IMG/VR virus record: IMGVR_UViG_3300017917_001342
Coordinates: 1 to 64,000 of that record
Length of the DNA: 64,000 nt
Reading direction: 5' to 3' (one strand)
In this document: one piece after another, positions 14,833-64,000 of the stretch
Numbering within the stretch: the stretch's first letter is position 1
Layout: each line of letters starts with the position of its first letter
Notes under the pieces: model-generated
Seen by the model: the letters and a program-made list of their open reading frames with translations, nothing else
The model's database searches: none
What the model was told of the DNA's origin: nothing
Made by a program: the position numbers and the translations under genes

Positions 14833-15114
14833 TCAACCTTTACGCTTCAAACTGCTAATAACTGTTTCTGAGTTTGAAAACATAGGATTGCTAACATGAT
14901 AACCATGTCCGCAGGAACTGCAATAAAACTGTATGGTTTTGAAAATGAGATTAGTAAAATCAAATCCCGCAACTTGCTTACATTCTGGGCAAGTAAACGG
15001 GACTGTTCCTAATGATACATGTTGATGTGTTGGAGTTACTCGGTCAACTAAAACGTCTGTAAGTTTTTTCCTGCGTTTTTTAGGCGTTGGAAACTTAATG
15101 ATATTGTTAGACAT
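14833..15114 (-). CDS. Zinc-ribbon protein
   Basis: CPEC...CSSC; GGAGG RBS. Confidence 0.7.
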   Translation of the reverse strand: MSNNIIKFPTPKKRRKKLTDVLVDRVTPTHQHVSLGTVPFTCPECKQVAGFDFTNLIFKTIQFYCSSCGHGYHVSNPMFSNSETVISSLKRKG

Positions 15115-15121
15115 TTTAGAA

Positions 15122-15165
15122 TTCCTCCTTAAATATTTACTATAGCAGTAACATATTGCGGAGAA
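15122..15165 (-). promoter_or_regulatory. Late promoter (GTAAATA) inside an RBS-sequestering hairpin
   Basis: TTCTCC-gc-AATAT-g-TTACT-loop-AGTAA-ATATT-taa-GGAGGA. Confidence 0.6.
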
Positions 15166-16839: not shown

Positions 16840-20802
<3,963 letters not shown>

Positions 20803-20810
20803 GGTTTCAC

Positions 20811-20844
20811 TGCACTGCGTATCATGGATTATTTATCGCATGCA
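20811..20844 (-). promoter_or_regulatory. Late promoter GATAAATA within an inverted repeat
   Basis: TGCATGCG...CGCA(G)TGCA flanking GATAAATA (20837-20830). Confidence 0.55.
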
Positions 20845-20852
20845 ACTAACTG

Positions 20853-23657
20853 TCAGACAACGACATTGTGACCGCTTATTTGAGGAGTTGTGATACGCAG
20901 TAAACGTCTCAACAAAGTAATACTCTGAGTGGTTGGTATACCTTGATCAAACGTTGTACTATACAGATCAAAAATAGTAAACTCTTGATCAAAAATTGTA
21001 GTACCCCATGCGAGATAAGCTATTCCCTGCCATAATACATAGTCGTCGTCAAATCGAGTGTTGCCAAAATCAAAAATTTCTAAATTATTATCAAATATTG
21101 TGTCTTTTGGTTCTAACCATTCAGCAAAGAACGTGCCGCCGCCGTCCCATTGTGTTTGGCCGCCATCAAATGTAGTGTCGCCTGTCCAGTTGATGCCTTG
21201 CATTTCTATTATTGCATGCTGTAACGGCCATCGGTTGTAATAGAATTCTGCGTTGACTTCCGGAGTTTGTCTATTAACTACATCATCGCCATATGATGTA
21301 TACACTGTTCCAATACCAATATAAGGGAACCACGTTTTTTGCCATGATGGTAGTAACTCTTTGCCAGCAACACTAACTGATGCAGATGTATATCCTGCAC
21401 CACCATCTATTACTCTACAGTCCAATATGCCCAATTTAAATGTGACATCTGCAGGTAAGCTGTTAATATCGGTGTCGTTTGTCAAACGCATTATACCAAC
21501 TGGCCACACTGTGTAACTACCACCTGTGATTATTTCAAAATTTAAAATACTACCGTTTTCATCGACTTCGCTTACTTTGACAATTGCAGGACTATTACTA
21601 GTGTGGCTGATAGTAATTTCCTGTCCAACAGTCCAATTTGTACCAGGATAGTTGATTGTGTAACCGATTACAGTTAAATTACTTGAAATTGTAGCAGGTA
21701 TTGTGCCACCAGATACTACAATAGTTGGTTCATACAAATAGCCAGATCCTGGATTGATGATTTCAATACCAGTAATAGTGTTAGTACCGTAATCTATAAT
21801 AGCTTGTAATTCTGCACCAGATCCTTGCCCATCTGTAACCCATCCCAATCCAGAAATAAGATCATTACGTATGTTTTCGAGACTAGGAGGATATGTTGGT
21901 GCAAATTTTATTTGCCAATTGCTGTTTGTTCCTGCGCCACTTGTAAGTTGACTGTCTATTATGATAACGTAATCGCTGACAAATGTAATAGGACCCTGCA
22001 TCCAAACTGTTGGGTTATTGGTGTTAGATATACGTAGCTGAGTTCCTACAACAAGACTGCTGCTAGCTGGTAGCATAGTAAGAGAATCAAATGTCACTAG
22101 TCCTTTTGACACTGTAACAGTGTCATTGCTGACACCCAATACATCTGCAATTTGTGGTATTACAGAATCTGCACCGTCTGTATTATCTAACACAGAACTG
22201 TAAAAAAATGTAGTTGTTGGGCTAACTTCAACGTTGGTAACTGCACCTATCATTACTTCGCTTGTATGTAGATGTAGGTTTGCAAAATTAATAGCCGTCG
22301 ATGGATTATCTACTGAATAGTTTAATCCTGTTATCAATGGTATGTATGGTGTGTATTGAAGTTCTTGAGGTGTAACATTTGCATCAGGAACCCAGGAATA
22401 GTTGATCACAGTTCCGGCGTAATTGTAATAGGCGTTTTTGATATTGCCTTCTAGCGGTATCGTTAAATTTAAATACTGATATTTTACGCCGCGTTGAACA
22501 GACAGCGTGTATCTACGAGTTATAGTTTGTACACCATCATTTGCACTTATATCAAAATAATAGTCTCTATCTCTAGTTTGGAATTCTAAAAATCCACTTA
22601 TAAAACCAAACTGTCTATCAAGTATCAATGTTCTAGGTAAAATACCACCTACTAGATTGTAGTCAATTGTACCCGGCTGTGTAGTAATTGCACTGACATC
22701 AAATGCATGGAATCGACCATCTAAGACTGGACCCAGGTTTGCAGAACTGTTAGTCCATCGTAAGAAATCGCCAATGCTTGAAGGATTACCAATAATGTCA
22801 AATGTTCTAATAGAAACACCGTTGACACTTGTTGCAGCAACAGTAAATTGATACACAGTTGTAGTATATTCTACTGGCAAATTACCATAGATCAATGCTT
22901 GATTAGATACAGAAGCGTTGCTTACAAGTGTAAAAGGAAAACTAGGTGTGCTCGACACAATGCTGTATGATATAGGTACACCGCTGCTTTCATATGCAGC
23001 TATAGGTACTTCAACAAATTGATTTTCAAAATCCTCAGCTATTAACCCACTTGGTGTAACCCATGCAGGTGCATGCGGTATTGTCAATACTGAAATAGTT
23101 ACATCGAGATCGCTATAGACTGCACCAGTTGTTGCACGTATCGTAAATGGTGTGATCACATCTGACAACACTGTGGGAGCAATGTATGTTATTACACCAG
23201 TTTGCGAATTTATAGATAAACCCACAGGCGGTGTAAATTCTGGAATACTATACACAATAGGATATGCAGTGTCAGTTGTTGCAGACACTGTATAGGTTGT
23301 AGTAACTCCGCTAGATGCATAGCCTAAAAATGATCGTTGTCCAAACCAGCTAGGTGCATTAACCACCGGTGTGATTGCTATGGTAAATGTGCGGTCAGCT
23401 ACTTGATTTTGTGGATTAGTAATTCGCCATGTTATTTGGCTAACAGTGTTTATTGCAACGCCGTTACTTTCGCCTGTTATCACAATGGTATTGTTCTGTC
23501 TTTGCCATTGCAGTCCGGCTGGTAAATTACCATTTAGACGAGTTACTGTGCTGTCAGTTGGTGCAGAAAATGATACAGTCAACGGATTAATGTTGAAGCT
23601 GTAAGTTTCAATATACGTGCCTAAATTACCAGGCGTTATCCAAATAGGTACTGTCAT
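20853..23657 (-). CDS. Large virion protein with Ig/cadherin-like repeats (baseplate/wedge-like, putative)
   Basis: P.W.TP.G.L repeats, GLSINSQTGVI, IINPGSGY motifs, TTFD repeats; late promoter. Confidence 0.7.
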   Translation of the reverse strand: MTVPIWITPGNLGTYIETYSFNINPLTVSFSAPTDSTVTRLNGNLPAGLQWQRQNNTIVITGESNGVAINTVSQITWRITNPQNQVADRTFTIAITPVVNAPSWFGQRSFLGYASSGVTTTYTVSATTDTAYPIVYSIPEFTPPVGLSINSQTGVITYIAPTVLSDVITPFTIRATTGAVYSDLDVTISVLTIPHAPAWVTPSGLIAEDFENQFVEVPIAAYESSGVPISYSIVSSTPSFPFTLVSNASVSNQALIYGNLPVEYTTTVYQFTVAATSVNGVSIRTFDIIGNPSSIGDFLRWTNSSANLGPVLDGRFHAFDVSAITTQPGTIDYNLVGGILPRTLILDRQFGFISGFLEFQTRDRDYYFDISANDGVQTITRRYTLSVQRGVKYQYLNLTIPLEGNIKNAYYNYAGTVINYSWVPDANVTPQELQYTPYIPLITGLNYSVDNPSTAINFANLHLHTSEVMIGAVTNVEVSPTTTFFYSSVLDNTDGADSVIPQIADVLGVSNDTVTVSKGLVTFDSLTMLPASSSLVVGTQLRISNTNNPTVWMQGPITFVSDYVIIIDSQLTSGAGTNSNWQIKFAPTYPPSLENIRNDLISGLGWVTDGQGSGAELQAIIDYGTNTITGIEIINPGSGYLYEPTIVVSGGTIPATISSNLTVIGYTINYPGTNWTVGQEITISHTSNSPAIVKVSEVDENGSILNFEIITGGSYTVWPVGIMRLTNDTDINSLPADVTFKLGILDCRVIDGGAGYTSASVSVAGKELLPSWQKTWFPYIGIGTVYTSYGDDVVNRQTPEVNAEFYYNRWPLQHAIIEMQGINWTGDTTFDGGQTQWDGGGTFFAEWLEPKDTIFDNNLEIFDFGNTRFDDDYVLWQGIAYLAWGTTIFDQEFTIFDLYSTTFDQGIPTTQSITLLRRLLRITTPQISGHNVVV

Positions 23658-23661
23658 GATT

Positions 23662-23689
23662 CATCCGATTGTATGATATTTATCGGATG
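23662..23689 (-). promoter_or_regulatory. Late promoter GATAAATA with 8-bp RBS hairpin
   Basis: CATCCGAT...ATCGGATG perfect inverted repeat. Confidence 0.6.
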
Positions 23690-24215: not shown

Positions 24216-24569
24216 TTAGTTCTTTAGATCTGTGGCTAACTGGAAGCTCTCGCCGCATCCACAGGTGTTGATTGCCAAAGGGTTTGACCATATTAATTGC
24301 GATTCAAATTCAGTTGTTTTTAGATCAAGTATGCTGCCGATAATGCTTAGAATACTTGCACCGTCTATTACTACTCGGCAACTATCCCAATTAACTACTT
24401 CGTCAAATTTACCGTATTGATCCCATTCGCAGAGATCGTAGGTATATTTGTGACCACTACAGCCTTTGTTGTTAACCCCAACACGCAGATGCTTGTTGGG
24501 ATTGTTTTTTAGTATTTCACTGATATACTGCTTGGCAGCAGGTGTAATTGTTATAAACTCTCGTGTCAC
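24216..24569 (-). CDS. iscA: A-type Fe-S carrier IscA/HesB
   Basis: GCSG and CGCGESF motifs. Confidence 0.9.
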   Translation of the reverse strand: MTREFITITPAAKQYISEILKNNPNKHLRVGVNNKGCSGHKYTYDLCEWDQYGKFDEVVNWDSCRVVIDGASILSIIGSILDLKTTEFESQLIWSNPLAINTCGCGESFQLATDLKN

Positions 24570-24895
24570 TTATCAAATCCATCGCTAAGCATCATGAACA
24601 ACATCTTTTGTTCAATTGCTTCGTCGATGTTAGGCCACATTGACTTCAATTGATCAGCAGTGATTTCGACATACTGATTTTGAGCTTTTTTCTTTGCCAA
24701 CACATCCATTTGAATGCTGGGCTTCCAAGATGAATGTTTGTTGACACTGATAGTTTTGCCAACAATCGCCCAAAACGCAAATGCAACCTGTTGATAATTG
24801 CGCACATTGGTACCAGATGTTGGTACCATCCAACCCCAAATTTTATTACCGGGCTCGTAGTACATAACTTGTTTGATCTCGTAATTTGCGGTCAT
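24566..24895 (-). CDS. Hypothetical, paralog of 36071..36364 (WGR-like, tentative)
   Basis: KIWG...FW...G...K..Y.......WP pattern shared. Confidence 0.6.
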   Translation of the reverse strand: MTANYEIKQVMYYEPGNKIWGWMVPTSGTNVRNYQQVAFAFWAIVGKTISVNKHSSWKPSIQMDVLAKKKAQNQYVEITADQLKSMWPNIDEAIEQKMLFMMLSDGFDK

Positions 24896-24998
24896 GGCAT
24901 CCAACTCAAATGTTGTTCATATGTCAGTAGTATATATGACTTTATCATTTTGTCTAGGTATTATTTGCAGATATTTTGCTGATCTGGCATAATTTACT

Positions 24999-27113
24999 AT
25001 GAAAGAATTTGGAAAAGTCGACCATTCAGCTAGCACAACACGATTTGATTCTGACGACAGACATCAACGTATGTTGCAGGCAATAACACCGTGGGCTAAA
25101 AAGCTACCACAGAAAAATCTAACACCTGTTGAAGTAAAACCTGCAACACGTAAAACCAAGCTGCTCTTAATGTTGCTGCCAGAGTGGGCGCACAAGTTTC
25201 CGCCCTATAATCTAGCAAGACTTGGCAGTGTCACTAGAGCCGCTGGTTACGAAACTCATATCTGGGACATAAATGTAGCAGCGCGAAGAGATTTTATACA
25301 AAATGATTGGCCTAAAATAAACTACGATCCCTGGGATGGTATGAGAGACTGGCATTGGATGGCTCCGCAGTATTTTGACGATCTGCACGAGTATATGCAG
25401 CCATTGTTAGAAATGTATCTTAAAAAAATCTCAGAACTCAAACCCGATTTAATCGGGTTTACACTGTACTACTGTAATCAGGCTCCGACACTGTGGCTTG
25501 CTCAACAGATAAAACGTCGCTGGCCTCACATTAAAATTGCAGTGGGTGGGTCTGCAACACATCCGCAATATTATAAACCAGATCCGGAATATGATTATGT
25601 CATAAACGGCGAGGGCGAAAATCTACTACTGAAACTGTTAGAAGATATAGAGAACGGTGTAGAACACGTAACACCGTTGACTCTACGTCAACCAGAAAAC
25701 GAAAAGATGGATTTGGACAAATTACCTTTGCCAGACTACAGTTTTTTTGATTTTAATCAGTATGATATACCAAACGGTGTAAACAGTGAACTCAGTAGAG
25801 GCTGCACGGCTAAATGCACATTCTGTGAAGAAACACATTTCTATAGATATCGGCAACGTCAAGCGGGCAGTGTGCTAAAAGAAGTAACACATTTGTATGA
25901 TACCTACGGCATAGACACATTCTGGTTTATTGACAGCCTTGTTAACGGTAATCTAAACGAACTTCGTGCATTTTGCAAAGGTATAGTTGCAGCAGGTATG
26001 AATATACATTGGACTGGCTATGCAAGATGCGACGGTAGAATGGACTTAGACTATTACAAGGACCTTGCTGCCAGTGGATGTGTTGCACTAAACTATGGTT
26101 GTGAAAGTGGCAGTCAAGCAGTGCTCGATGCTATGGATAAACGTGTTAGCGTTGAGGAAATGGAAGCTAACTTTCGCAGCGGCAAACTAACTGGTGTCGA
26201 AGCATATACCAACTGGATAGTTGCATTTCCAACTGAAACACTAGTTGATTTTTCGCACACTATGACTATGCTGTGGAGAAATCGCAACAACAATATAACA
26301 GTTATCAGTCCAGGACAGGGATTTGGCGTAGGGCTTGACACGATTGTTGGACAAAACTTGCCCAAGTTTGGACTCAGTGACATTTACTACATGCGTCAAT
26401 GGATACGTAGCGATTTTACTATGGGTAAATTACATCGCATGATGCGTGTTAAAACCTTTAACATATTTTTAGACAATCTAGTAACAGAACAACCTATTGC
26501 TAAAAGCACTAGGCCCGAACTCAAAAAAACCTACACTATAGAATTTAACAATCCGCAGAGATTAAATGAAATCGAATATGAGTCGTTTGACTACAATATA
26601 ATAAGTGCAAATATAAATCCATTTGCTGATTCAGCGTTGAATGAAATTTGGCCGCTATTGCGCATGCTGTGGAGAACCCGCGGCGGCTATAAAACATATA
26701 TACGATTCAACAAAGACGAAGATTTCAAAGAGTTTGGTAGTAATACTGCATGCCCATTTGATGCAGAGTTTAATTTCGAAATTGACGACCACGGCAAATG
26801 GTCAGCAGATTTTTCATGGAATTTTGATCAGCCAGAAGATCCATGGATGATTGTTGACTATACTAGAGAAACAACCAATGCTAGTATACGTGCAAGACGT
26901 TTAGCCAGACCAGATCTTGCAGATCCAACCAATGCATTTAGTGAAGATGAATGGAACCAAAAAGTTCAGTTGAAACAGCAATATGAACAAATTGATTTGT
27001 CATTTTCACACACATGGTCCGGTCAAGGAAACTGGGGCAAAACTGCTCGTCTTACCCCAGATGAAAATGTCAGCTTGTTTACAGCTATGCTACGTAATAT
27101 TAAATCGCAGTAA
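24999..27113 (+). CDS. Cobalamin-binding radical SAM protein
   Basis: SRGCTAKCTFC (CxxxCxxC); N-terminal B12-binding-like PDLIGFT/IAVGG; GCESGS. Confidence 0.88.
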   Translation: MKEFGKVDHSASTTRFDSDDRHQRMLQAITPWAKKLPQKNLTPVEVKPATRKTKLLLMLLPEWAHKFPPYNLARLGSVTRAAGYETHIWDINVAARRDFIQNDWPKINYDPWDGMRDWHWMAPQYFDDLHEYMQPLLEMYLKKISELKPDLIGFTLYYCNQAPTLWLAQQIKRRWPHIKIAVGGSATHPQYYKPDPEYDYVINGEGENLLLKLLEDIENGVEHVTPLTLRQPENEKMDLDKLPLPDYSFFDFNQYDIPNGVNSELSRGCTAKCTFCEETHFYRYRQRQAGSVLKEVTHLYDTYGIDTFWFIDSLVNGNLNELRAFCKGIVAAGMNIHWTGYARCDGRMDLDYYKDLAASGCVALNYGCESGSQAVLDAMDKRVSVEEMEANFRSGKLTGVEAYTNWIVAFPTETLVDFSHTMTMLWRNRNNNITVISPGQGFGVGLDTIVGQNLPKFGLSDIYYMRQWIRSDFTMGKLHRMMRVKTFNIFLDNLVTEQPIAKSTRPELKKTYTIEFNNPQRLNEIEYESFDYNIISANINPFADSALNEIWPLLRMLWRTRGGYKTYIRFNKDEDFKEFGSNTACPFDAEFNFEIDDHGKWSADFSWNFDQPEDPWMIVDYTRETTNASIRARRLARPDLADPTNAFSEDEWNQKVQLKQQYEQIDLSFSHTWSGQGNWGKTARLTPDENVSLFTAMLRNIKSQ

Positions 27114-27558
27114 GTGCGCCGCCCACTGGATTGATAAGTGTTCTCAACTGCCAACGTGTCTTTGCATGCGAATCCAGTCGTTCTGCAATGTAGTTCATAA
27201 TAGCCTGATTGTCTGCAATCTCAGCAATTTCAAACAATTTGTTAAGGAACATTATCATACGTTCATGATCTTTTAACAGACGATCGATGTAGCCTTTTGC
27301 ATCCAATATGCCTTCTAAGTCATCTACTAAACTAAGAGACTTGTATTCTGCTAAGCTACCTGGTGCAAATGCATCTAGTTCGCGTATTTTTTCTGCAATA
27401 GTATCAACTTGATCAAATAGATCTTGATATTGCTCACCAAACATGCTGTGCAGTTGTGGAAAGAACATACCAGTTACGTTCCAATGTGCATTGTGTGTTT
27501 TGAGATACAATGCAAAATTTGTTGCTAAGAAAACTTTAAGTCCGTCTACAAGATCCAT
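27100..27558 (-). CDS. dps: Dps family ferritin-like protein
   Basis: HWNVTG..F..LH..F.EQY...D.IAE.IR; TATAAATA at 27590-27583; GGAG RBS. Confidence 0.93.
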   Translation of the reverse strand: MDLVDGLKVFLATNFALYLKTHNAHWNVTGMFFPQLHSMFGEQYQDLFDQVDTIAEKIRELDAFAPGSLAEYKSLSLVDDLEGILDAKGYIDRLLKDHERMIMFLNKLFEIAEIADNQAIMNYIAERLDSHAKTRWQLRTLINPVGGALTAI

Positions 27559-27600: not shown

Positions 27601-28419
27601 TTAATTTGATCCGCACTGTGTTTTTTTAGCTGTAGTCAATGTTTTGAAATTAGCTGGCCAAATCGTAGTTGATTTTTTATTTTTGTCAACAGTGTTTGGT
27701 ACAGGAAAAGTTATACCAGACAACTGTTCAATTTCACCGATGCTAACTGATACTGTGGATAAATCAGTACCTTGTCCTTCTCGTTGCGGAAACAAAAATG
27801 CCTGCGCCTGTTGCGTATTGTTGTCTATTATGATCTTATAGAGATAATCTGGTACAACTACAGAATTAGAACCTATAGTTTTACTTGTGCCAACGGTGTA
27901 AATGTTACCGGCATATACTGTATATGTGTGTTTAGTGGTCCACGCCCAGGTACGTTCTGTAGTTTCAAGTACTTTCCATATGCCTCTGTTGAGTCCTGGT
28001 AATTGCGGACTCATGTTGCTCAACAAAAAGCTTTCATACATTGCATCTTCATTGAATGCCATACTAGCAGCACTGGCAATATGCCCAATGTCATATCCAC
28101 TTTTAGCGTAGTCATCTAACTCTGATTGCTGCCAATCTGGTAAGCTACGGTCTTCTGCAAATGAATTGCTTCTTGGTATACAACCCACAGCACGATCCGG
28201 TGTTAATGTGTATGTTACCCAAATTGGAATTTTCGCAACAATGTCATATTCTAAAATGTATGCACTTCTACATATTAATGTATTACCAACTCGAGTACTT
28301 GGCATACCCCAAGGCGTTAGTGCAGCGCATTGTTCTACTGGTCGAGGTGAAGATTGATCCCATGCAAATGCATGCATAGGTGTAACCAACAGAAATATAG
28401 CGAGAATTTTTGATAACAT
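27601..28419 (-). CDS. DNA/RNA non-specific endonuclease (NucA/EndoG-like) with signal peptide
   Basis: YDIGH, SNMSPQ...NRG.W; N-terminal MLSKILAIFLLVTPMHAFA. Confidence 0.88.
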   Translation of the reverse strand: MLSKILAIFLLVTPMHAFAWDQSSPRPVEQCAALTPWGMPSTRVGNTLICRSAYILEYDIVAKIPIWVTYTLTPDRAVGCIPRSNSFAEDRSLPDWQQSELDDYAKSGYDIGHIASAASMAFNEDAMYESFLLSNMSPQLPGLNRGIWKVLETTERTWAWTTKHTYTVYAGNIYTVGTSKTIGSNSVVVPDYLYKIIIDNNTQQAQAFLFPQREGQGTDLSTVSVSIGEIEQLSGITFPVPNTVDKNKKSTTIWPANFKTLTTAKKTQCGSN

Positions 28420-28423
28420 TTAA

Positions 28424-28448
28424 TACTCCGTTTATCGGAGTACTTATC
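28424..28448 (-). promoter_or_regulatory. Late-type promoter GATAAGTA with hairpin occluding the GGAG RBS
   Basis: TACTCCG-ataaa-CGGAGTA. Confidence 0.6.
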
Positions 28449-45957: not shown

Positions 45958-46718
45958 GATTTTGGCTTTTTACAAAAACGAGTGTTGCAATATATCACAT
46001 TGGCTTCCATATCGTGTGCAAGGTGATAAGCAGATTTCAACTCCCAAAATCCTAGTGTTTTGAGATACGCATCTATGTTTGGTTTAAGTGCTTGTCCTTC
46101 GTAGTAGGGTTTAATTCCAGCTTCTGTCATAACGACTTTGGTGTTTAGTAAGGTGTTTTTAGCACCTTTTAACACATCTAGTTCTGCACCCTGTACATCC
46201 ATCCATATGGCATCAATATCAGGTATGTGGTATTGCTTACGCCAATCGTCTAGAGCATAGCCCCAGACTTTTACAGATTTCTGTGCCCAATGTTCGTTGA
46301 TAAAACTGCCTTCGAGCCCTGGTATTAGTTTGTACTTGCTACCAACACCGCGATTGTATTTGGTTTCACTACGCTCTAAATCAACTGCGTTAAATTCCAA
46401 TATACCTGTGTGATCGTTGCCAGCCATGTTCCACAGCTTGATACGATTTTTAACTTCTGTGCGATTGATGTTTGCGTTACAGATAGGAATGTTATCTGCT
46501 GCTGCTTCAAATATGTGTATCTGTGCTGTTGGTAACAGTCTTGCTATTTCAACACTGTCTAATGCATCCCAACTGCCAATTTCCATTACAGTTTTTAAAC
46601 TGTCAAAATCGACTATGTCTGCAAGATGTTGAAAGCGGTCTTTAACTAAAACAGAATTGCTACCTGATTCTGCATATGTGCCCGCTGCGGCTAACCGTGC
46701 TGTGTATTCTTCGTTCAT
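45954..46718 (-). CDS. FkbM-family methyltransferase
   Basis: MEIGS, IDAIWMDVQGAELDVLKG, YEGQ; GGAG RBS before ATG 46718. Confidence 0.85.
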   Translation of the reverse strand: MNEEYTARLAAAGTYAESGSNSVLVKDRFQHLADIVDFDSLKTVMEIGSWDALDSVEIARLLPTAQIHIFEAAADNIPICNANINRTEVKNRIKLWNMAGNDHTGILEFNAVDLERSETKYNRGVGSKYKLIPGLEGSFINEHWAQKSVKVWGYALDDWRKQYHIPDIDAIWMDVQGAELDVLKGAKNTLLNTKVVMTEAGIKPYYEGQALKPNIDAYLKTLGFWELKSAYHLAHDMEANVIYCNTRFCKKPKS

Positions 46719-46768
46719 CAACATCTCCGAGTTTGATACTACAGTGTAATCAAACTCAGAGTCGAATA

Positions 46769-46936
46769 TCAATTTTTCTTGTAATAGGTATACACAAAAT
46801 ATATTGTAGCAATTACGACTACAATCAAACCTGGTATTGTCATAAACAGATAGGACATTAACACTGCAACAGTTGAAATTCCTATCACAACGAGACTGTA
46901 TATTCCATAGAGTATTGCTGCAATTGCAGTTAGCAT
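46769..46936 (-). CDS. 55-aa membrane protein (not in ORF track)
   Basis: MLTAIAAILYGIYSLVVIG...YYKKN*. Confidence 0.55.
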   Translation of the reverse strand: MLTAIAAILYGIYSLVVIGISTVAVLMSYLFMTIPGLIVVVIATIYFVYTYYKKN

Positions 46937-47698: not shown

Positions 47699-47956
47699 TT
47701 AGTCGTCATAGCCTTTGCTGAGACTACGCAGAACACGAGCTTGATCACGTTCTTCTGAATCCAATCGCATTTTAGCAATGCCAAAGGTTGAATAACCAAT
47801 ACCGCCGACGATCAGTGCAATCACTGCGACGATGCGGTAGATTTCAGGGAGTAGCGAAAGTACATAGACAAACCCTAGTCCAACAACACATACCATCACA
47901 AATGACAGATAGGTTTTTGCCCAAATAATCGCTAGCCGTTTAGTGCGTTGCTGCAT
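47699..47956 (-). CDS. Two-TM membrane protein
   Basis: GGAG RBS; promoter TTGACT-16-TATTGT starting 48011. Confidence 0.65.
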   Translation of the reverse strand: MQQRTKRLAIIWAKTYLSFVMVCVVGLGFVYVLSLLPEIYRIVAVIALIVGGIGYSTFGIAKMRLDSEERDQARVLRSLSKGYDD

Positions 47957-48017
47957 GATCTGCTCCATATGTTGATTTATTATACAATAGCAGATCACGC
48001 AGCAAAGTCAATGAAAA

Positions 48018-50419: not shown

Positions 50420-50577
50420 GTTTTGGTCCCCCTTTCATGGGCCGTTTGTATCTATGCCATTACCATGGTCATACATCCTAAGGACTGTGGTTTCGCATTT
50501 GTACAAAAGATTTGCACAATGCATTGGTCGAGCAGTCCAAAGACTCGACGCAATGACGTTAATTGTGAATATTTATC
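50420..50577 (-). ncRNA. Candidate structured RNA or leader following late promoter GATAAATA
   Basis: Three to four consecutive hairpins, no convincing ORF. Confidence 0.4.
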
Positions 50578-50822: not shown

Positions 50823-50912
50823 TGGCGGAGGGTGTGGGATTCGAACCCACGAGGGGCTTTCACCCCTGACGGTTTAGTAGACCGCTGTTTTCGACCGCTC
50901 AACCAACCCTCC
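50823..50912 (-). tRNA. tRNA-Ser, anticodon ACT
   Basis: GGAGGGT/ACCCTCC acceptor, GCGGT-CTACTAA-ACCGT anticodon arm, long variable arm, GTTCGAATC, G73, encoded CCA. Confidence 0.9.
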
Positions 50913-51707: not shown

Positions 51708-51784
51708 TGGCGGCCACGGTAGGACTCGAACCCACAACCTTCTCCTTAGGACGGAGCAGCTCTATCCAGTTGAGCTACGTAGCC
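51708..51784 (-). tRNA. tRNA-Arg, anticodon CCT
   Basis: GGCTACG/CGTGGCC acceptor, A20, GCTCC-GTCCTAA-GGAGA, GTTCGAGTC, CCA. Confidence 0.9.
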
Positions 51785-51875
51785 ATTTGTATTTTAATTT
51801 AGCATAGACTGATGTGTACTGTCAAGTACACTGTGCAATTTGCCAATAAATATCACATAATCGTCAAGGTATGCT

Positions 51876-53402
51876 ATGAAAATCAACGAAGTCAAAACCA
51901 CATTAAACACTCTGCGAGCCATTACAGCAGGTAGCAGTGCCAGAGTAGGTATAGAATTTGAATTGGTTATTAATAACGAAACTGGCGATTTTAGCGTATA
52001 TCCAGAACCAGATTATGAAGAAGATCAATATGTTGAATCTTCTAACTGGGAATCAATGTGTGACGACATTACGAATTTCTTTCAAGGCGAATACAACACT
52101 CGCAGTGAAATAAAAAGTGTACTAGACAATGCTAGAGAACCATTTGATGAATGGGTATTACAACAGTGGTTAGACTTAGTTAAAGATGAATTTGATGACT
52201 GGAAAAAAAAGAAATATCCAGATGACGATGATGTAGACGAAGATACATTCTACAACGAAGAATACGATGACTGGTACGACGAAGGCAAACTACTAAAACA
52301 ATACTTAGAAGAAAATGGCCTTGACCAGATGAGCGGCTGGCAAAGTCTCGAATGGCCTTATTACGCAGATCCAGAAATTCCAGTTGATGTTGATCATGTT
52401 GCTGCATCATTTCGTCGTGCTACTGGTATGCGAGCAAGTCTACAAGGTGGTTCAAACGAATACAAAATAGAATCTGACAGCAGTATTAAACCAACCAATA
52501 GCGATGATGCTGGCTTGGAATTTATCAGCCCGCCGCTCAGCATAAACCAAATGATAGACCAACTGCATAAAGTCAAAGCCTGGGCACTAGAAGGCAATGC
52601 CTACACTAATAAAAGCTGTGGGTTGCATATTAACATAAGTGTGCCTGGTTACAACATGGCAGATTTAGATTATATTAAATTAGCATTGTTTTCCGGCGAC
52701 AACTACATACTCGATACATTTGGTCGTACGGCTAATGATTATACTAGCCCTGCAATGGAACTGATAAAACGCAGAATAAAAAACAGTACTGCTAACGTAC
52801 CGCTGGCATTAGATATGCTGGCAGTTAACTTGTTGAAAAAAGCCAGCCAGACTATACACAACGGCTACGTTAACAAATATACCAGTATCAATCCCAAAGA
52901 AGACTATGTGGAATTTCGTGCAGCGGGCGGCGATTGGCTAAACATGGATCTTGACAAGGTGATAGAAACCATGCTGCGTTATGTTGTTGCATTGCAGATA
53001 GCACTTGATCCCAATGCGTATAAACGAGAATATGCAGCAAAACTCTACAAGGTGCTAAGTCCGAACAAACAGGATGATGCTGTTGCGCTGTTTGCTATGT
53101 GGAAAGCTGACAACATAGATTCGGCAGATCTCAAATCACAGTGGGCAAGAAAAATATTGTTTGCCGATCCTGAAAAAACGTTCTCACCAGAAAAAGAACG
53201 ACTAGCTGCAAACATACTCGCTAAAGAAAACCTATGGTTGATACGCGATGGCAGAACTGGTTCAATTCAACGACAGATTCGTGCTGCTACCAAAGCAGAT
53301 GCAGAAAAGAAATACCAGGAATGGTTAGATCTGTTCAGCAATCCTAGCAAGCCATACTATCTACAGAGCATTGCAGATTATCGCCGCACAAAAGTCACTT
53401 AA
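51876..53402 (+). CDS. Putative amidoligase (COOH-NH2 ligase)
   Basis: GIEFEL, DSSI, LEFISPPL, NKSCGLHINIS, KYTSIN, VEFR; AATAAATA at 51845-51852. Confidence 0.82.
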   Translation: MKINEVKTTLNTLRAITAGSSARVGIEFELVINNETGDFSVYPEPDYEEDQYVESSNWESMCDDITNFFQGEYNTRSEIKSVLDNAREPFDEWVLQQWLDLVKDEFDDWKKKKYPDDDDVDEDTFYNEEYDDWYDEGKLLKQYLEENGLDQMSGWQSLEWPYYADPEIPVDVDHVAASFRRATGMRASLQGGSNEYKIESDSSIKPTNSDDAGLEFISPPLSINQMIDQLHKVKAWALEGNAYTNKSCGLHINISVPGYNMADLDYIKLALFSGDNYILDTFGRTANDYTSPAMELIKRRIKNSTANVPLALDMLAVNLLKKASQTIHNGYVNKYTSINPKEDYVEFRAAGGDWLNMDLDKVIETMLRYVVALQIALDPNAYKREYAAKLYKVLSPNKQDDAVALFAMWKADNIDSADLKSQWARKILFADPEKTFSPEKERLAANILAKENLWLIRDGRTGSIQRQIRAATKADAEKKYQEWLDLFSNPSKPYYLQSIADYRRTKVT

Positions 53403-53580
53403 CCAGTGATTCGATCCAGGCAGCAAATCTCTCTTGACGTAGTTCTTTTATTTGACTTTCTGTCATAGACACATATTCAATTGGACTTAGCGTAACAGAG
53501 TCTCGATGTGTGACGCTGTTATGTGCAAAATCAAAATACACAGTCCACCAACCGTCTGGACGTTGTGTTGCACCTAACAT
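53395..53580 (-). CDS. Small late protein
   Basis: GGAG RBS, late promoter AATAAATA at 53611-53604. Confidence 0.6.
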   Translation of the reverse strand: MLGATQRPDGWWTVYFDFAHNSVTHRDSVTLSPIEYVSMTESQIKELRQERFAAWIESLVK

Positions 53581-53582
53581 CT

Positions 53583-53621
53583 ACTGAGCTCCAATTAACT
53601 GTATATTTATTGAAGCTCAGT
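53583..53621 (-). promoter_or_regulatory. 13-bp hairpin sequestering the RBS, overlapping a late promoter
   Basis: ACTGAGCTTCAAT...ATTGGAGCTCAGT. Confidence 0.7.
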
Positions 53622-54087
53622 GACGATTTGCGTAGATGATTTCCACAAAGCCTTCATCGTGTGTGGGTTCTTCAAGCTGGCTCTTCATACCCATCACAAT
53701 GTTTGCAGGAATAGTCTTGCCAGGACGATTTGCAAGACGACGATTCAGTTCAGTGTCATCCGGAGTAGTAAAGTACACCGCAACAACGTCGTAGTGTTCA
53801 GGCACAATGGCCAGTTTCTTTTTGCGAGTTTTTGCAGTGATATTGGTTTGATCCCAGATCACAGTGCGATCAGCGGCAAACGCATCAGCAGCGTCTTTGT
53901 ACATCTGCTTTTCAGCAGCAGCAATTTCTGCTTTGAACACATCGTTGTAGGTCTTACCCTGCGCAGCCGCAGCAGCTTCGATCTTGTCGTCAGTGCTAAG
54001 AACCGTTTCGCGATCAAGACCCATGAACTTGAGCCACGTGCTTTTGCCGCTACCCGGAACGCCAATCAACATATACAGTTTCGGCAT
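53617..54087 (-). CDS. P-loop kinase (polynucleotide-kinase-like)
   Basis: GVPGSGKST, STD, WDQTN, R...R; AGGAG RBS; TTGACA-16-TATAAC promoter starting 54138. Confidence 0.85.
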   Translation of the reverse strand: MPKLYMLIGVPGSGKSTWLKFMGLDRETVLSTDDKIEAAAAAQGKTYNDVFKAEIAAAEKQMYKDAADAFAADRTVIWDQTNITAKTRKKKLAIVPEHYDVVAVYFTTPDDTELNRRLANRPGKTIPANIVMGMKSQLEEPTHDEGFVEIIYANRH

Positions 54088-54121
54088 AGTGTATCTCCTT
54101 TGTTGCTAGTGTTATAGCAGA

Positions 54122-54328
54122 TTATGTTTCAGTGTCAAGACCCATTGGTCCCTGCATGAATTTTAAAAATCTCAAGTTGCCGTCAAGTTCTTCTTCGCTG
54201 ATGCCGCAACTCCATGCATGCAAACAGTTGGGACTATTGGTTTTACAGATAGGGCATTCCCATCCATAACTGTGTTTGAATTCATATAGTACCAAACACT
54301 TTTCACAAACCGGCGGGCCCAGTCCCAT
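54122..54328 (-). CDS. Zinc-finger microprotein
   Basis: CEKC...CPIC. Confidence 0.65.
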   Translation of the reverse strand: MGLGPPVCEKCLVLYEFKHSYGWECPICKTNSPNCLHAWSCGISEEELDGNLRFLKFMQGPMGLDTET

Positions 54329-54602
54329 CTAATTTAATTCCTTTTATTGCAGCTAGAAATATCAAATTGCTTTCTAACTGCTGATCCGATAATCCACTTT
54401 CCTCAATGTCAAATTGCGGGTCACCGTTGCCGCAGATTGGACAGTTGATATAAACACCCCCGTCGTCGAAGTATAAATTGCAGACTACGGAGCAATGTTC
54501 ACACACTGCTCCGCTAGGTCTTAGATATTCGCCCCTGATGTAATTATTGAGTTGCAACCATTGCACGCTTGTCAATGACTTTATCAGCAAGACCGTAGGC
54601 AA
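54303..54602 (-). CDS. Zinc-finger microprotein, paralog of 54122..54328 (start uncertain)
   Basis: CEHC...CPIC...GLS...L..NL.FL. Confidence 0.55.
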   Translation of the reverse strand: MPTVLLIKSLTSVQWLQLNNYIRGEYLRPSGAVCEHCSVVCNLYFDDGGVYINCPICGNGDPQFDIEESGLSDQQLESNLIFLAAIKGIKLDGTGPAGL

Positions 54603-55152
54603 CAGATTCGCTGGCAGTTAGGAATGTGTCGCGGTCCATGTCTTTTTCAAACTGTTCGTAGGTTTTGCCTGCGCTGTTGTGATCAACATAGATCTGCGTA
54701 AGTTCAACTTTCATACGTTCGATCTCCCTGTAGGTGATTGCAATGTCGCTGACCATACCCTGTGCGCCACCGCTTGGCTGATGAATCATGTGACGAGCAT
54801 GTTTCATAATATAACGATGACCAGGCTCACCTGCCTGTGCTAGTAGAGAACCCATACTAGCAGCTTGACCCATTACAAATGTGTGTACAGGACTCTTGAT
54901 AAACTGCATGGTATCATAGATGCTCATACCCGCAGTAACCGATCCACCTGGGCTGTTGATGTAAAAGTTAATCGGCGCCTTGGCATTTTCACTTTCGAGC
55001 AGCAGCAATTGCGCAACAATCAAACTGGCACTGTGATTATTAACATCAGTGTCCATAATGATAATACGGTCTTTGAGCAAACGGCTATAGATATCATAGC
55101 TGCGTTCGCCACTGGCACTTTTTTCTACTACAATAGGCACTAGATTAGGCAT
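54544..55152 (-). CDS. clpP: Clp protease proteolytic subunit
   Basis: DIYSRLLKDRII, YINSPGG, AASMG, MIHQP, DRD. Confidence 0.96.
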   Translation of the reverse strand: MPNLVPIVVEKSASGERSYDIYSRLLKDRIIIMDTDVNNHSASLIVAQLLLLESENAKAPINFYINSPGGSVTAGMSIYDTMQFIKSPVHTFVMGQAASMGSLLAQAGEPGHRYIMKHARHMIHQPSGGAQGMVSDIAITYREIERMKVELTQIYVDHNSAGKTYEQFEKDMDRDTFLTASESVAYGLADKVIDKRAMVATQ

Positions 55153-55182
55153 AGATTTTCCTTTGTTTATTTTTCAGTATAA

Positions 55183-55209
55183 ATGCCGCCGACAGTTTTG
55201 TCAGCGGCA
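55183..55209 (-). terminator. Possible terminator hairpin
   Basis: TGCCGCTGACA-aaac-TGTCGGCGGCA followed by TTT. Confidence 0.45.
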
Positions 55210-55365
55210 AATTTGATTAATTTCGTCTGCGCTGCGATCAGACATAGCATAGCTGGCAAGACACTTGGATTGTTTTTCAGCTTTGGCATACTCGCTAACA
55301 GCAAGGCTACTAAACATTGCTATAATTGAAATAGCAGTTGCTATCATAAACCATTTAAATTCCAT
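55201..55365 (-). CDS. 54-aa single-TM protein (not in ORF track)
   Basis: MEFKWFMIATAISII...C...ICR*. Confidence 0.6.
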   Translation of the reverse strand: MEFKWFMIATAISIIAMFSSLAVSEYAKAEKQSKCLASYAMSDRSADEINQICR

Positions 55366-63497: not shown

Positions 63498-63578
63498 AGT
63501 TGTGCCTCGTGATTGTTATTCAACTGTGACACTAGCAGACTGTTTTGAAAATGTCAATGTCTGCTACTAAATATTCCC

Positions 63579-64000
63579 ATGCGTGTAGATGAATTTTTCA
63601 ATCCTATAATAGCGTTGCTGCATGGTAACATGCTGCTTAGCGAAGCCCCTATTGGCACTGCGATAGTAAATCGCAATTGGCGAGAGTATGACCTAGGTGG
63701 GAAACCCGATCGTGATTTTAAACTGTTAGGAAAACTTGGTAGATTTAAGATCGGTGTACAGCCCGAATGGAGTGATTCCATAGACTATGCAGTTGATGTG
63801 TTGATACTTGGTTCTAAAAATACTGTAGTTGGCAAAATCAACATTACTCGAGACGACCGATCGAATAGAAAGATTGCATTTTGGTCTATACACCAATCAA
63901 TACTACACAAAGACCTGCAAGGTCGAGGCATAATGCCTAAAGTCTATGCGTTTTTAGTAAACCACGGCTATAACCTTCGTGCTGACAGTGAACAAAGTGC
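63579..64000 (+). CDS. GNAT acetyltransferase-like protein, 3'-truncated (not in ORF track)
   Basis: Open frame MRVDEF...LHKDLQGRGIMPKVY...DSEQS; TAAATA 5 nt before ATG. Confidence 0.7.
   Translation, partial: MRVDEFFNPIIALLHGNMLLSEAPIGTAIVNRNWREYDLGGKPDRDFKLLGKLGRFKIGVQPEWSDSIDYAVDVLILGSKNTVVGKINITRDDRSNRKIAFWSIHQSILHKDLQGRGIMPKVYAFLVNHGYNLRADSEQS

What the first reader, a model, noticed from the sequence alone, without database searches (positions are those of the whole stretch)
53583..53621. Repeated early-off/late-on translational switch: RBS hairpins overlapping late promoters at five genes
Seen: inverted repeats whose 3' arm covers the RBS region and whose 5' arm lies at or before a TAA(A/G)TA box, at 53583-53621 (13 bp), 28424-28442, 23662-23689, 20811-20844 and 15122-15165. 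The divergent late genes (51876, 63579), which have no read-through, show no such hairpin. Established: T4 genes e, soc and I-TevI use this logic. Inference: systematic use lets late genes sit inside early operons.
Basis: partly seen in the sequence, partly recalled or inferred. Interest (0 to 1): 0.6.

Follow-up and report, generated by a model that had tools for sequence, protein, structure and literature searches.

The report
Late-promoter hairpins that gate translation
A 518-kb freshwater jumbo phage repeatedly places its T4-type late promoter inside an RNA hairpin that hides the next gene's ribosome-binding site, so the gene should be translated only from its own late transcript; this is the trick already known from T4 lysozyme, and three of the five cited sites hold up.

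Summary
The window is the first 64 kb of a complete 518,643-bp uncultured phage genome that encodes a gp55-type late sigma. TAAATA is its late-promoter core: 204 copies against about 500-700 expected, 47% of them within 60 nt upstream of a start. Of the five sites, site 1 (53583-53621) is outstanding: opening the RBS costs 23.1 kcal/mol in read-through RNA and 2.7 in RNA from the predicted late start (0/200 shuffles). Site 3 is good (4/200). Site 2 has a real hairpin (1/200) but an off-consensus TAAGTA box. Site 5 is weak (17/200) and site 4 is at chance (62/200). Genome-wide, 18 of 50 TAAATA genes behind a co-directional gene have such a hairpin against 0 of 24 behind a divergent gene. In matched 30-60-nt gaps the counts are 10/18 with the box and 6/55 without. 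None of 35 hairpins looks like a terminator, and non-Watson-Crick stem positions are G.U, not A.C (22:2). Orthologs of one gated gene keep the design with at least seven unrelated stems. The same metric recovers T4 e, I-TevII and segB, plus loci taken to be I-TevI and gene 49. Verdict: a real T4-type read-through translational gate in a distant jumbo-phage clade, and a new member of a known kind. By-products are 21 predicted leaderless late mRNAs and a few sigma70-promoter versions.

The parts
53583..53621 (-). Site 1 hairpin. The 5' arm is 53621-53609 and contains the TGA stop (53619-53617) of the upstream kinase-like gene. The TAAATA box is 53609-53604, and the predicted late +1 is 53599/53598 in the loop. 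The 3' arm is 53595-53583 and contains the SD GGAG (53592-53589). The ATG is at 53580.
   Evidence: 13-bp core stem, one G.U; open 23.1 vs 2.7 kcal/mol; 0/200 shuffles. It lies inside a 139-nt run identical in a 91%-identical relative. An RNA-library contig bridges it.
53395..53580 (-). Gated gene of site 1: 61 aa, no known family. It behaves as a variable cassette: the body is replaced in some relatives, and in one relative the whole gene is absent together with the hairpin.
   Evidence: structural variants (joints 53397->53626 and 53383->53522); heavy divergence downstream of 53543.
53617..54087 (-). Upstream co-directional gene (AAA_33 / P-loop kinase-like), the source of read-through into site 1. 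It lies in a unit with a sigma70-like promoter near 55204-55176.
   Evidence: X21 RNA-library contigs cover 53522-55287 as one block.
23662..23689 (-). Site 3 hairpin. The 5' arm is 23689-23682, the TAAATA box 23682-23677, and the 3' arm 23669-23662. The ATG is at 23657.
   Evidence: 8 bp; 10.0 vs 1.0; 4/200. It is identical in five relatives whose adjacent protein is 65-72% identical. It lies in a 34-nt identical run, the 5th longest in a 9-kb alignment at 74% identity.
20853..23657 (-). Gated gene of site 3: a 934-aa putative virion protein downstream of a Fe-S/unknown-gene unit that has a sigma70-like promoter at 24956-24929.
28424..28446 (-). Site 2: a 7-9-bp hairpin (28442-28424) covering the SD GGAG, with an off-consensus TAAGTA box (28446-28441) overlapping the 5' arm. 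It lies upstream of the Endonuclease_NS gene 27601-28419.
   Evidence: 11.4 vs 2.3; 1/200. In relative L037 two stem pairs change C-G to U.G and G-C to G.U, and the box is conserved. TAAGTA is only weakly promoter-like.
15122..15165 (-). Site 5: a weak 7-bp stem (one G.U) with a 31-nt loop holding the TAAATA box 15139-15134. The gene is 14833-15114 (93 aa, zinc-ribbon-like hints).
   Evidence: (9.2 vs 1.6; z 1.6; 17/200): suggestive only.
20811..20844 (-). Site 4: the TAAATA box 20835-20830 is real, but the claimed hairpin is no better than shuffles. The gene is 16840-20802 (collagen-like tail fibre).
   Evidence: 7.4 vs 3.2; z 0.3; 62/200.
47948..48011 (-). The same design around a sigma70-type promoter. 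The -35 TTGACT is at 48011-48006. A 17-bp stem has its 5' arm (48005-47989) in the promoter spacer, and its 3' arm (47966-47948) covers GGAG and the ATG of gene 47699-47956.
   Evidence: (23.8 vs 4.0; z 5.2; 0/40).
51847..51852 (+). TAAATA late-promoter box of the divergent gene 51876-53402 (amidoligase-like). There is no hairpin, so it serves as a negative control.
   Evidence: (3.2 vs 2.4).
63568..63581 (+). TAAATA box (63568-63573) exactly 5 nt before the ATG of gene 63579, which predicts a leaderless late mRNA.

Best explanation
These are read-through translational gates of the T4 gene e / I-TevI type. The phage encodes a gp55-type sigma that uses a TAAATA box with no -35 element. Where a late gene follows a co-directional gene across a short gap, the promoter sits inside a hairpin. 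The 5' arm lies upstream of or overlaps the box. The box and the predicted +1 (5th-6th nt after the box) lie in the loop. The 3' arm carries the Shine-Dalgarno sequence and/or the AUG. RNA entering from upstream contains both arms and hides the RBS. RNA started at the gene's own late promoter lacks the 5' arm and is translatable. At site 1, site 3 and the adaptor gene the nearest upstream promoter looks sigma70-type or early. There the gate gives early-off/late-on translation. After late units it makes output depend only on the gene's own promoter. Shown here: the motif statistics, the folding contrast, the orientation and box dependence, the conservation and the strand asymmetry. Inferred: the position of +1, the timing classes, and the repression of translation itself. 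This applies to sites 1 and 3, probably to site 2 if TAAGTA is a weak late promoter, doubtfully to site 5, and not to site 4.
For: A gp55-type sigma is encoded (phrog_12791, 6e-84). TAAATA occurs 204 times vs 490-710 expected, with 47% of copies within 60 nt upstream of starts. 17/74 box-preceded genes have z>2 vs shuffles. ddG >= 8.5 occurs in 17.6% of them vs 2.9% of other genes (p 5e-6). Orientation rule: 18/50 co-directional vs 0/24 divergent (p 2.5e-4); this replicates in orthologs (z>2 in 9/21 vs 1/20). Gap-matched control (30-60 nt, co-directional): 10/18 with the box vs 6/55 without (p 2.6e-4). 0/35 hairpins are terminator-like. In a strand-neutral search the internal non-WC positions are G.T 22 vs A.C 2, and sense RNA is more stable than antisense in 15/18. 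Adaptor-gene orthologs: 13/43 distinct leaders have ddG >= 8.5, built from at least 7 unrelated stems. In the alignable subgroup there is one compensatory and two wobble changes, none disruptive. Site 2 has two wobble-preserving changes. Sites 1 and 3 are conserved islands. A sharp peak of 21 ATGs lies 4-5 nt after the box, which places +1 where assumed. In the T4 control, gene e ranks first, I-TevII and segB (identified from annotation) also score high, and so do two loci I take by position and size to be I-TevI and gene 49 (precedent in PMC3014915, PMC2988022). An RNA-library contig bridges site 1. The gated genes are late-type, including a lysozyme-domain and a holin-like gene.
Against: No transcription start, timing class or translation level has been measured; the host is unknown and the phage is uncultured. 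Sites 1 and 3 are invariant in all relatives found, so there is no covariation at the window's own best sites. Conservation there could partly reflect the promoter, the RBS and the end of the upstream gene. 9/31 hairpins follow late units, which does not fit a pure early/late switch. The hairpin sets were chosen by sense-strand folding, which biases the asymmetry test (reduces this but does not remove it). The RNA evidence is from assembled contigs of a metatranscriptome: there is no strand information, and DNA carry-over is possible. Gene calls and promoter classes come from my own crude scripts. Folding was done at 37 C.
Confidence: 0.72

Rival explanations
1. The hairpins belong to the upstream gene: 3'-end stabilisers, terminators or RNase III-type processing sites of the upstream mRNA. 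They overlap the next RBS only because the gaps are short.
For: Hairpins occur only after co-directional genes and mostly in 30-60-nt gaps, which is also what a 3'-end element would show. Stems of 13-17 bp could be nuclease substrates.
Against: In matched co-directional 30-60-nt gaps without a TAAATA box only 6/55 have such hairpins, vs 10/18 with the box. 0/35 have a short loop plus a U-rich tail (median 1 T in the next 8 nt). The loops carry the promoter box and are often 12-30 nt. An RNA-library contig runs through site 1.
Confidence: 0.12
2. The inverted repeats act on DNA, as palindromic operators for a regulator of the late promoter (I-TevI autorepresses its late promoter in this way) or as cruciforms.
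For: The repeats flank or include the promoter box. T4 I-TevI has an operator over its late promoter (PMC2988022).
Against: Non-Watson-Crick positions are G.T 22 vs A.C 2 in a search that penalises both equally. Sense RNA folds better than antisense. The site 2 substitutions keep pairing only as sense RNA. Stem sequences differ completely between genes and between orthologs, so no common operator exists. Arm spacings vary from 4 to over 30 nt.
Confidence: 0.04
3. Chance complementarity in AT-rich leaders.
For: This is the best reading for site 4 (62/200 shuffles reach it) and a live one for site 5 (17/200).
Against: Sites 1-3 score 0/200, 1/200 and 4/200. There is a genome-wide excess, an orientation dependence and a box dependence.
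Confidence: 0.05

Closest known systems
T4 gene e (lysozyme) leader
   Same: Late promoter(s) lie immediately upstream of the RBS, within the DNA that encodes the 5' strand of an inhibitory helix. Long early transcripts hide the SD/AUG, and late transcripts lack the 5' strand and are translated (PMC3014915). My metric gives T4 e a ddG of 15.2, and site 1 here 20.4. A lysozyme-domain gene and a holin-like gene are among the gated genes here.
   Different: The phage is very different: a 518-kb uncultured freshwater genome with only a distant gp55 relative (31% identity over 94 residues to T4 gp55). The box core is the 6-mer TAAATA rather than the 8-mer TATAAATA. The gene gated at site 1 is a 61-aa protein of unknown function.
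T4 I-TevI, I-TevII, I-TevIII, segB and Aeh1 mobE (homing endonuclease leaders)
   Same: A late gene is embedded in an early or middle unit, with its RBS sequestered by a hairpin that the late transcript cannot form (PMC2988022). Like those mobile genes, the site 1 gene is a present/absent cassette among relatives, and it is deleted together with its hairpin and box. Site 2 gates a nuclease gene.
   Different: The site 1 product has no endonuclease signature. The site 2 gene is a non-specific Endonuclease_NS, not a homing enzyme, and its box is off-consensus. No operator-like similarity to a homing site was looked for.
T4 soc and gene 49 leaders
   Same: The logic is the same, and these are ordinary late or structural genes lying in early regions (PMC3014915). 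Most gated genes here are likewise structural (adaptor, baseplate, tail fibre).
   Different: soc scored only 3.4 with my metric, so the metric misses some true cases. Hence the frequencies given here are lower bounds.
Leaderless mRNAs such as lambda cI from PRM (from my own knowledge)
   Same: Translation depends on the AUG being at the 5' end. This is another way to make translation depend on the gene's own promoter; 21 genes here have the box 4-5 nt before the ATG.
   Different: Here it is a class of late genes under a gp55-type promoter. T4 shows no such peak.

Membership tests
T4-type late-promoter / RBS-hairpin translational switch (e, soc, 49, I-TevI class) | The phage encodes a gp55-type late sigma factor | tested here: met
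   G000 419801-420667(-): phrog_12791 'sigma factor for late transcription', 6e-84; phrog_234, 6e-21. It is adjacent to an SbcD/gp47-like gene.
T4-type late-promoter / RBS-hairpin translational switch (e, soc, 49, I-TevI class) | A -10-type AT box without a -35 element, immediately upstream of the RBS | tested here: met
   TAAATA is depleted genome-wide and concentrated 15-35 nt before starts, with no conserved -35. It is present at sites 1, 3, 4 and 5; site 2 has TAAGTA instead.
T4-type late-promoter / RBS-hairpin translational switch (e, soc, 49, I-TevI class) | SD and/or AUG paired with sequence upstream of the late start in the long RNA, beyond chance | tested here: met
   Met for sites 1, 2 and 3 (0/200, 1/200, 4/200). 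Not met for site 4 (62/200). Weak for site 5 (17/200).
T4-type late-promoter / RBS-hairpin translational switch (e, soc, 49, I-TevI class) | The late transcript starts inside the hairpin and so lacks the 5' arm | tested here: inconclusive
   No start has been mapped. There are two indirect supports: 21 ATGs lie exactly 4-5 nt after the box, which implies +1 at the 5th-6th nt, and the T4 box sits about one helical turn upstream of +1 (PMC2988020).
T4-type late-promoter / RBS-hairpin translational switch (e, soc, 49, I-TevI class) | Transcription from upstream reads through the site | tested here: inconclusive
   Hairpins occur only after co-directional genes (18/50 vs 0/24). There are no terminator features. 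One RNA-library contig bridges site 1, but contigs give no strand and DNA carry-over is possible.
T4-type late-promoter / RBS-hairpin translational switch (e, soc, 49, I-TevI class) | Translation is repressed on the long RNA and relieved on the short RNA | not testable with these tools
   This needs reporters or toeprinting. Only predicted opening energies are available.
Intrinsic (rho-independent) terminator | GC-rich stem, short loop, U-tract immediately 3' | tested here: not met
   0 of 35 hairpins have a loop <= 8 nt together with >= 5 T in the next 8 nt. None of the five sites appears in the terminator scans.
Any curated RNA family (Rfam 15) | A match at gathering score at the sites | tested here: not met
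   Only two tRNAs in the window (50826-50912 and 51711-51784, - strand).
Complete T4 late-transcription apparatus (gp55 + gp33 + gp45 clamp) | Homologs of the gp45 sliding clamp and of gp33 | tested here: inconclusive
   A T4 gp45 probe found nothing in G000, but a single distant probe is a weak test. gp33 was not searched.

The most novel reading that the evidence does not exclude
Own-promoter-only translation is a genome-wide design rule of this huge-phage clade, implemented in three interchangeable ways. These are hairpins around gp55-type late promoters (about 18 genes), hairpins built from the -35 element or spacer of sigma70-type promoters (about 4-5 genes, including window gene 47699-47956), and leaderless late mRNAs (about 21 genes). 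Together they would insulate 40 or more genes from read-through in a genome that appears to have few terminators. The same gene (the head-tail adaptor) switches between these solutions across relatives.
Probability: 0.3. Interest if true: 0.65.

Novelty: new member of a known kind. Interest (0 to 1): 0.45.

Why it matters
It shows that the read-through translational gate, known from a handful of T4 genes, is an old and portable solution that travels with gp55-type late transcription into very distant half-megabase freshwater phages. It obeys a simple rule that can be tested: it is present only behind a co-directional gene, and only when an internal late promoter is there. For annotation of uncultured huge phages it gives a sequence-only way to call late genes, late start sites and genes whose timing is tightly enforced. 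Here these include a lysozyme-domain gene, a holin-like gene and a mobile 61-aa cassette. The predicted leaderless late mRNAs and the sigma70-promoter versions are less expected and are worth an experiment.

Tried and rejected
Megablast of 6 kb against GenBank phages found no match. Relatives of the kinase gene in IMG/VR (12 loci) did not keep the downstream neighbourhood and so say nothing about site 1. The search for related loci with the 61-aa and 934-aa proteins found nothing in viral contigs. A T4 gp45 probe found nothing. The generic sigma70 and terminator scans were not above shuffles overall and were used only for individual sites. The first G.U-vs-A.C count on MFE helices (56:2) was set aside as biased by the folding algorithm and replaced by a strand-neutral count. 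The sense/antisense test is partly circular because the set was chosen by sense folding. The count of structure pairs on three sequences has no statistical power (180/500 shuffles). TAAGTA as a general promoter variant is not supported. The nearest-upstream-promoter classes (E vs L) differ in the expected direction, but the numbers are small and I ran no test on them (6/12 vs 9/31).

Full report
WHAT THE WINDOW IS. The window is bases 1-64000 of a single 518,643-bp contig. IMG/VR classes it as a complete virus record with direct terminal repeats. It has no close relative among GenBank phages and only distant protein similarity to jumbo phages such as Ralstonia RsoM2USA and Agrobacterium Atu_ph07. 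Public runs place it in a pond metagenome, with relatives in freshwater and aquatic samples from about 14 studies. Most genes in the window run on the - strand.

THE PROMOTER. I did not assume a T4 box. I called genes with a simple codon-usage script (678 genes) and looked for strand-specific k-mers enriched upstream of starts. Besides Shine-Dalgarno words, TAAATA stands out. It has 204 copies on both strands against 490-710 expected under Markov orders 0-3. 47% of copies lie within 60 nt upstream of a start, against a 4% baseline, and no one-mismatch variant comes close (TAAGTA 8%, TAATTA 12%). The profile is (A/c)TAAATA(T)(C/T) with nothing conserved at -35, and the distance to the ATG is mostly 15-35 nt. 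The genome encodes a gp55-type late sigma next to an SbcD/gp47-like gene (phrog_12791, 6e-84). Reading TAAATA as a T4-type late promoter is therefore well founded by inference. A second motif, TTGACA followed about 16-17 nt later by (TG)nTAnnnT, marks sigma70-type promoters.

THE FIVE SITES. For each gene I computed the free energy needed to make the RBS window (-14..+2) single-stranded. I did this in a long RNA (-70..+20) and in a short RNA beginning at the 6th nt after the box, and compared the long value with 200 dinucleotide shuffles of the part upstream of the predicted start.
- Site 1 (53583-53621): 23.1 vs 2.7 kcal/mol, z 6.2, 0/200. The stem has 13 bp with one G.U. The 5' arm contains the stop codon of the upstream kinase-like gene. 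The box and predicted +1 are in the loop, and GGAG is in the 3' arm.
- Site 3 (23662-23689): 10.0 vs 1.0, z 2.6, 4/200.
- Site 2 (28424-28442): 11.4 vs 2.3, z 3.7, 1/200, but the box is TAAGTA.
- Site 5: 9.2 vs 1.6, z 1.6, 17/200.
- Site 4: 7.4 vs 3.2, z 0.3, 62/200.
The divergent gene 51876 has a box and no hairpin (3.2 vs 2.4). So three of the five sites are real, one is weak and one is at chance.

GENOME-WIDE TESTS. Of 74 genes with TAAATA 12-60 nt upstream, 17 have z>2. A ddG of at least 8.5 kcal/mol occurs in 17.6% of them, against 2.9% of the other 580 genes (p 5e-6) and 4.9% of those with a gap of at least 20 nt (p 1e-3). The structures share one architecture.

The read-through model predicts that hairpins appear only where an upstream gene is co-directional. 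The counts are 18/50 (ddG >= 6) and 17/50 (z>2) for co-directional genes against 0/24 and 0/24 for divergent ones (p 2.5e-4 and 4.3e-4). A hairpin that merely served the upstream gene's 3' end would show the same orientation rule. I therefore compared co-directional pairs with 30-60-nt gaps: 10/18 with the box against 6/55 without it (p 2.6e-4).

None of 35 hairpins (18 from this genome, 17 from orthologs) combines a short loop with a U-rich tail. A strand-neutral search that penalises G.T and A.C equally finds internal non-Watson-Crick positions to be G.T 14 vs A.C 1 in the genome and 22 vs 2 with orthologs (p 5e-4 and 2e-5). This points to selection on the sense RNA rather than on a DNA palindrome.

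Classing the nearest upstream promoter gives hairpins in 6/12 cases after sigma70-type units (including both extreme cases), 9/31 after late units and 3/7 where none was recognised. The gate therefore silences read-through in general, and 'early-off' is only its clearest case.

RELATIVES. Site 1: two syntenic contigs (about 91-92% identical) carry the hairpin inside a 139-nt identical run, the 4th longest in 8 kb. The gene body downstream is full of substitutions and indels. Site 3: five relatives whose adjacent protein is only 65-72% identical have an identical hairpin, box and loop, while the 3 nt before the ATG vary. In a 9-kb alignment at 74% identity this is the 5th longest identical run. 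Neither site offers covariation. Site 2 in the 76%-identical relative changes two stem pairs to U.G and G.U, keeping pairing only in sense RNA.

The best comparative evidence comes from the strongest hairpin outside the window, upstream of the gp13-like head-tail adaptor gene (G000 392973-393725, 14-bp stem, 22.7 vs 2.0). Eighty IMG/VR loci with 62-90% identical proteins give 43 distinct leaders with a box 12-40 nt upstream. Of these, 13 have ddG >= 8.5 and 12 have z>2, built from at least seven unrelated stem sequences. In the alignable subgroup all 39 stem cells pair, with one compensatory change and two wobble changes (too few sequences for statistics). Hairpin presence again follows orientation (z>2 in 9/21 co-directional vs 1/20 divergent).

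POSITIVE CONTROL AND PRECEDENT. The same script on T4 puts gene e first (15.2). The next scores belong to 143694-144431 (13.2; I take this to be I-TevI from its size and position), I-TevII (12.7), 46382-46855 (12.6; I take this to be gene 49), and segB (10.5). soc scores only 3.4. In T4, 7/26 box-preceded genes reach 8.5. Reviews describe exactly this mechanism for e, soc, 49 and I-TevI (PMC3014915), and for I-TevI/II/III, segB and Aeh1 mobE (PMC2988022). The design is therefore known, and it is used here about as often as in T4, not more.

TRANSCRIPT-LEVEL HINT. Contigs of one freshwater metatranscriptome (X21) cover a single block at 53522-55287. This matches the unit from the sigma70-like promoter near 55.2 kb down to the small gene. 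One contig bridges the site 1 hairpin with more than 60 nt on each side, and the adjacent + strand late gene is not covered. Contigs show neither strand nor ends, and DNA carry-over cannot be excluded. This is compatible with a read-through RNA, and no more than that.

WHAT IS GATED. The gated genes with a family hit are the head-tail adaptor, a tail-spike-like protein, a baseplate hub/tail-lysozyme domain, a baseplate wedge, a tail fibre, a virion protein, a holin-like protein and a methyltransferase-like protein. The site 1 gene is a 61-aa protein with no family.

LIMITS. No start site, timing or translation has been measured. Gene calls, promoter classes and +1 positions come from my own scripts and from analogy with T4 (PMC2988020). 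Folding was done at 37 C.

VERDICT. This is a real T4-type read-through translational gate at sites 1 and 3, and probably at site 2. It is part of a genome-wide pattern in a distant jumbo-phage clade: a new member of a known kind, of moderate interest.

Noticed in passing
window 63568-63581 (+), and 20 more places in G000 (e.g. starts at 116884+, 203378+, 361221-, 497812-): 21 long ORFs start with an ATG exactly 4 (7 cases) or 5 (14 cases) nt after a TAAATA box. There are none at 0-3, 6 or 8-10 nt, and no SD. This predicts leaderless late mRNAs. T4 shows no such peak. In some adaptor-gene orthologs (L105, L106, L110) the box also sits 5 nt before the ATG, so one gene alternates between SD-led and leaderless forms.
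   Followed up: partly
window 47948-48011 (-); G000 306402-307562 (-), 282968-283285 (-), 386177-387523 (-): RBS-sequestering hairpins are built around sigma70-type promoters. The 5' arm is the -35 element itself (at 307562, a tRNA nucleotidyltransferase gene) or the promoter spacer (at 47956). Of 45 candidate promoters, 4 have ddG >= 8.5 and 5 have z>2. I did not find an early-promoter version of this gate described for T4 in the two reviews I read.
   Followed up: partly
window 53383-53626: The site 1 gene behaves as a cassette. One relative (run X6) lacks 53398-53625, that is the hairpin, box and gene together, with 23 other letters in its place. Others (X3, X6, L029) keep the leader and the first ~20 codons but replace the rest with about 244 unrelated letters (a 95-aa version).
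   Followed up: partly
window 50826-50912 and 51711-51784 (-): Two tRNA genes (Rfam). A further tRNA 3' end lies directly upstream of the gated lysozyme-domain gene at G000 125949. A TAAATA box at 50575 (-) has no called gene within 150 nt and is followed by a GTCGAG...CTCGAC hairpin.
   Followed up: no
window 55184-55209 (-): An 11-bp GC-rich hairpin overlaps a CTGACA-17-TATACT promoter-like site just upstream of the ClpP-like gene 54544-55152. This may be a terminator-promoter junction that begins the unit leading to site 1. It is 98% conserved in L029.
   Followed up: no
window 116-6694 (+) and 16840-20802 (-): A 2,192-aa ORF with only a weak ChW-repeat hint, and a 1,320-aa collagen-like tail-fibre gene with many repeated PHROG tail-fibre matches.
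   Followed up: no
window 24216-27113: A metabolic island next to the structural genes: an Fe-S biogenesis protein (PF01521), a divergent 704-aa B12-binding radical SAM enzyme, a ferritin/Dps-like gene (27100-27558) with its own TAAATA box, and a secreted-type Endonuclease_NS. The order is conserved in the 76%-identical relative L037.
   Followed up: no
G000 313404 (-) and 165048 (-): Two more TAAGTA boxes in promoter-like settings. One lies in the loop of a hairpin next to TAGGAG (313404). The other is TATAAGTA 5 nt before an ATG (165048). This hints that TAAGTA may be a weak late-promoter variant, which matters for site 2.
   Followed up: partly
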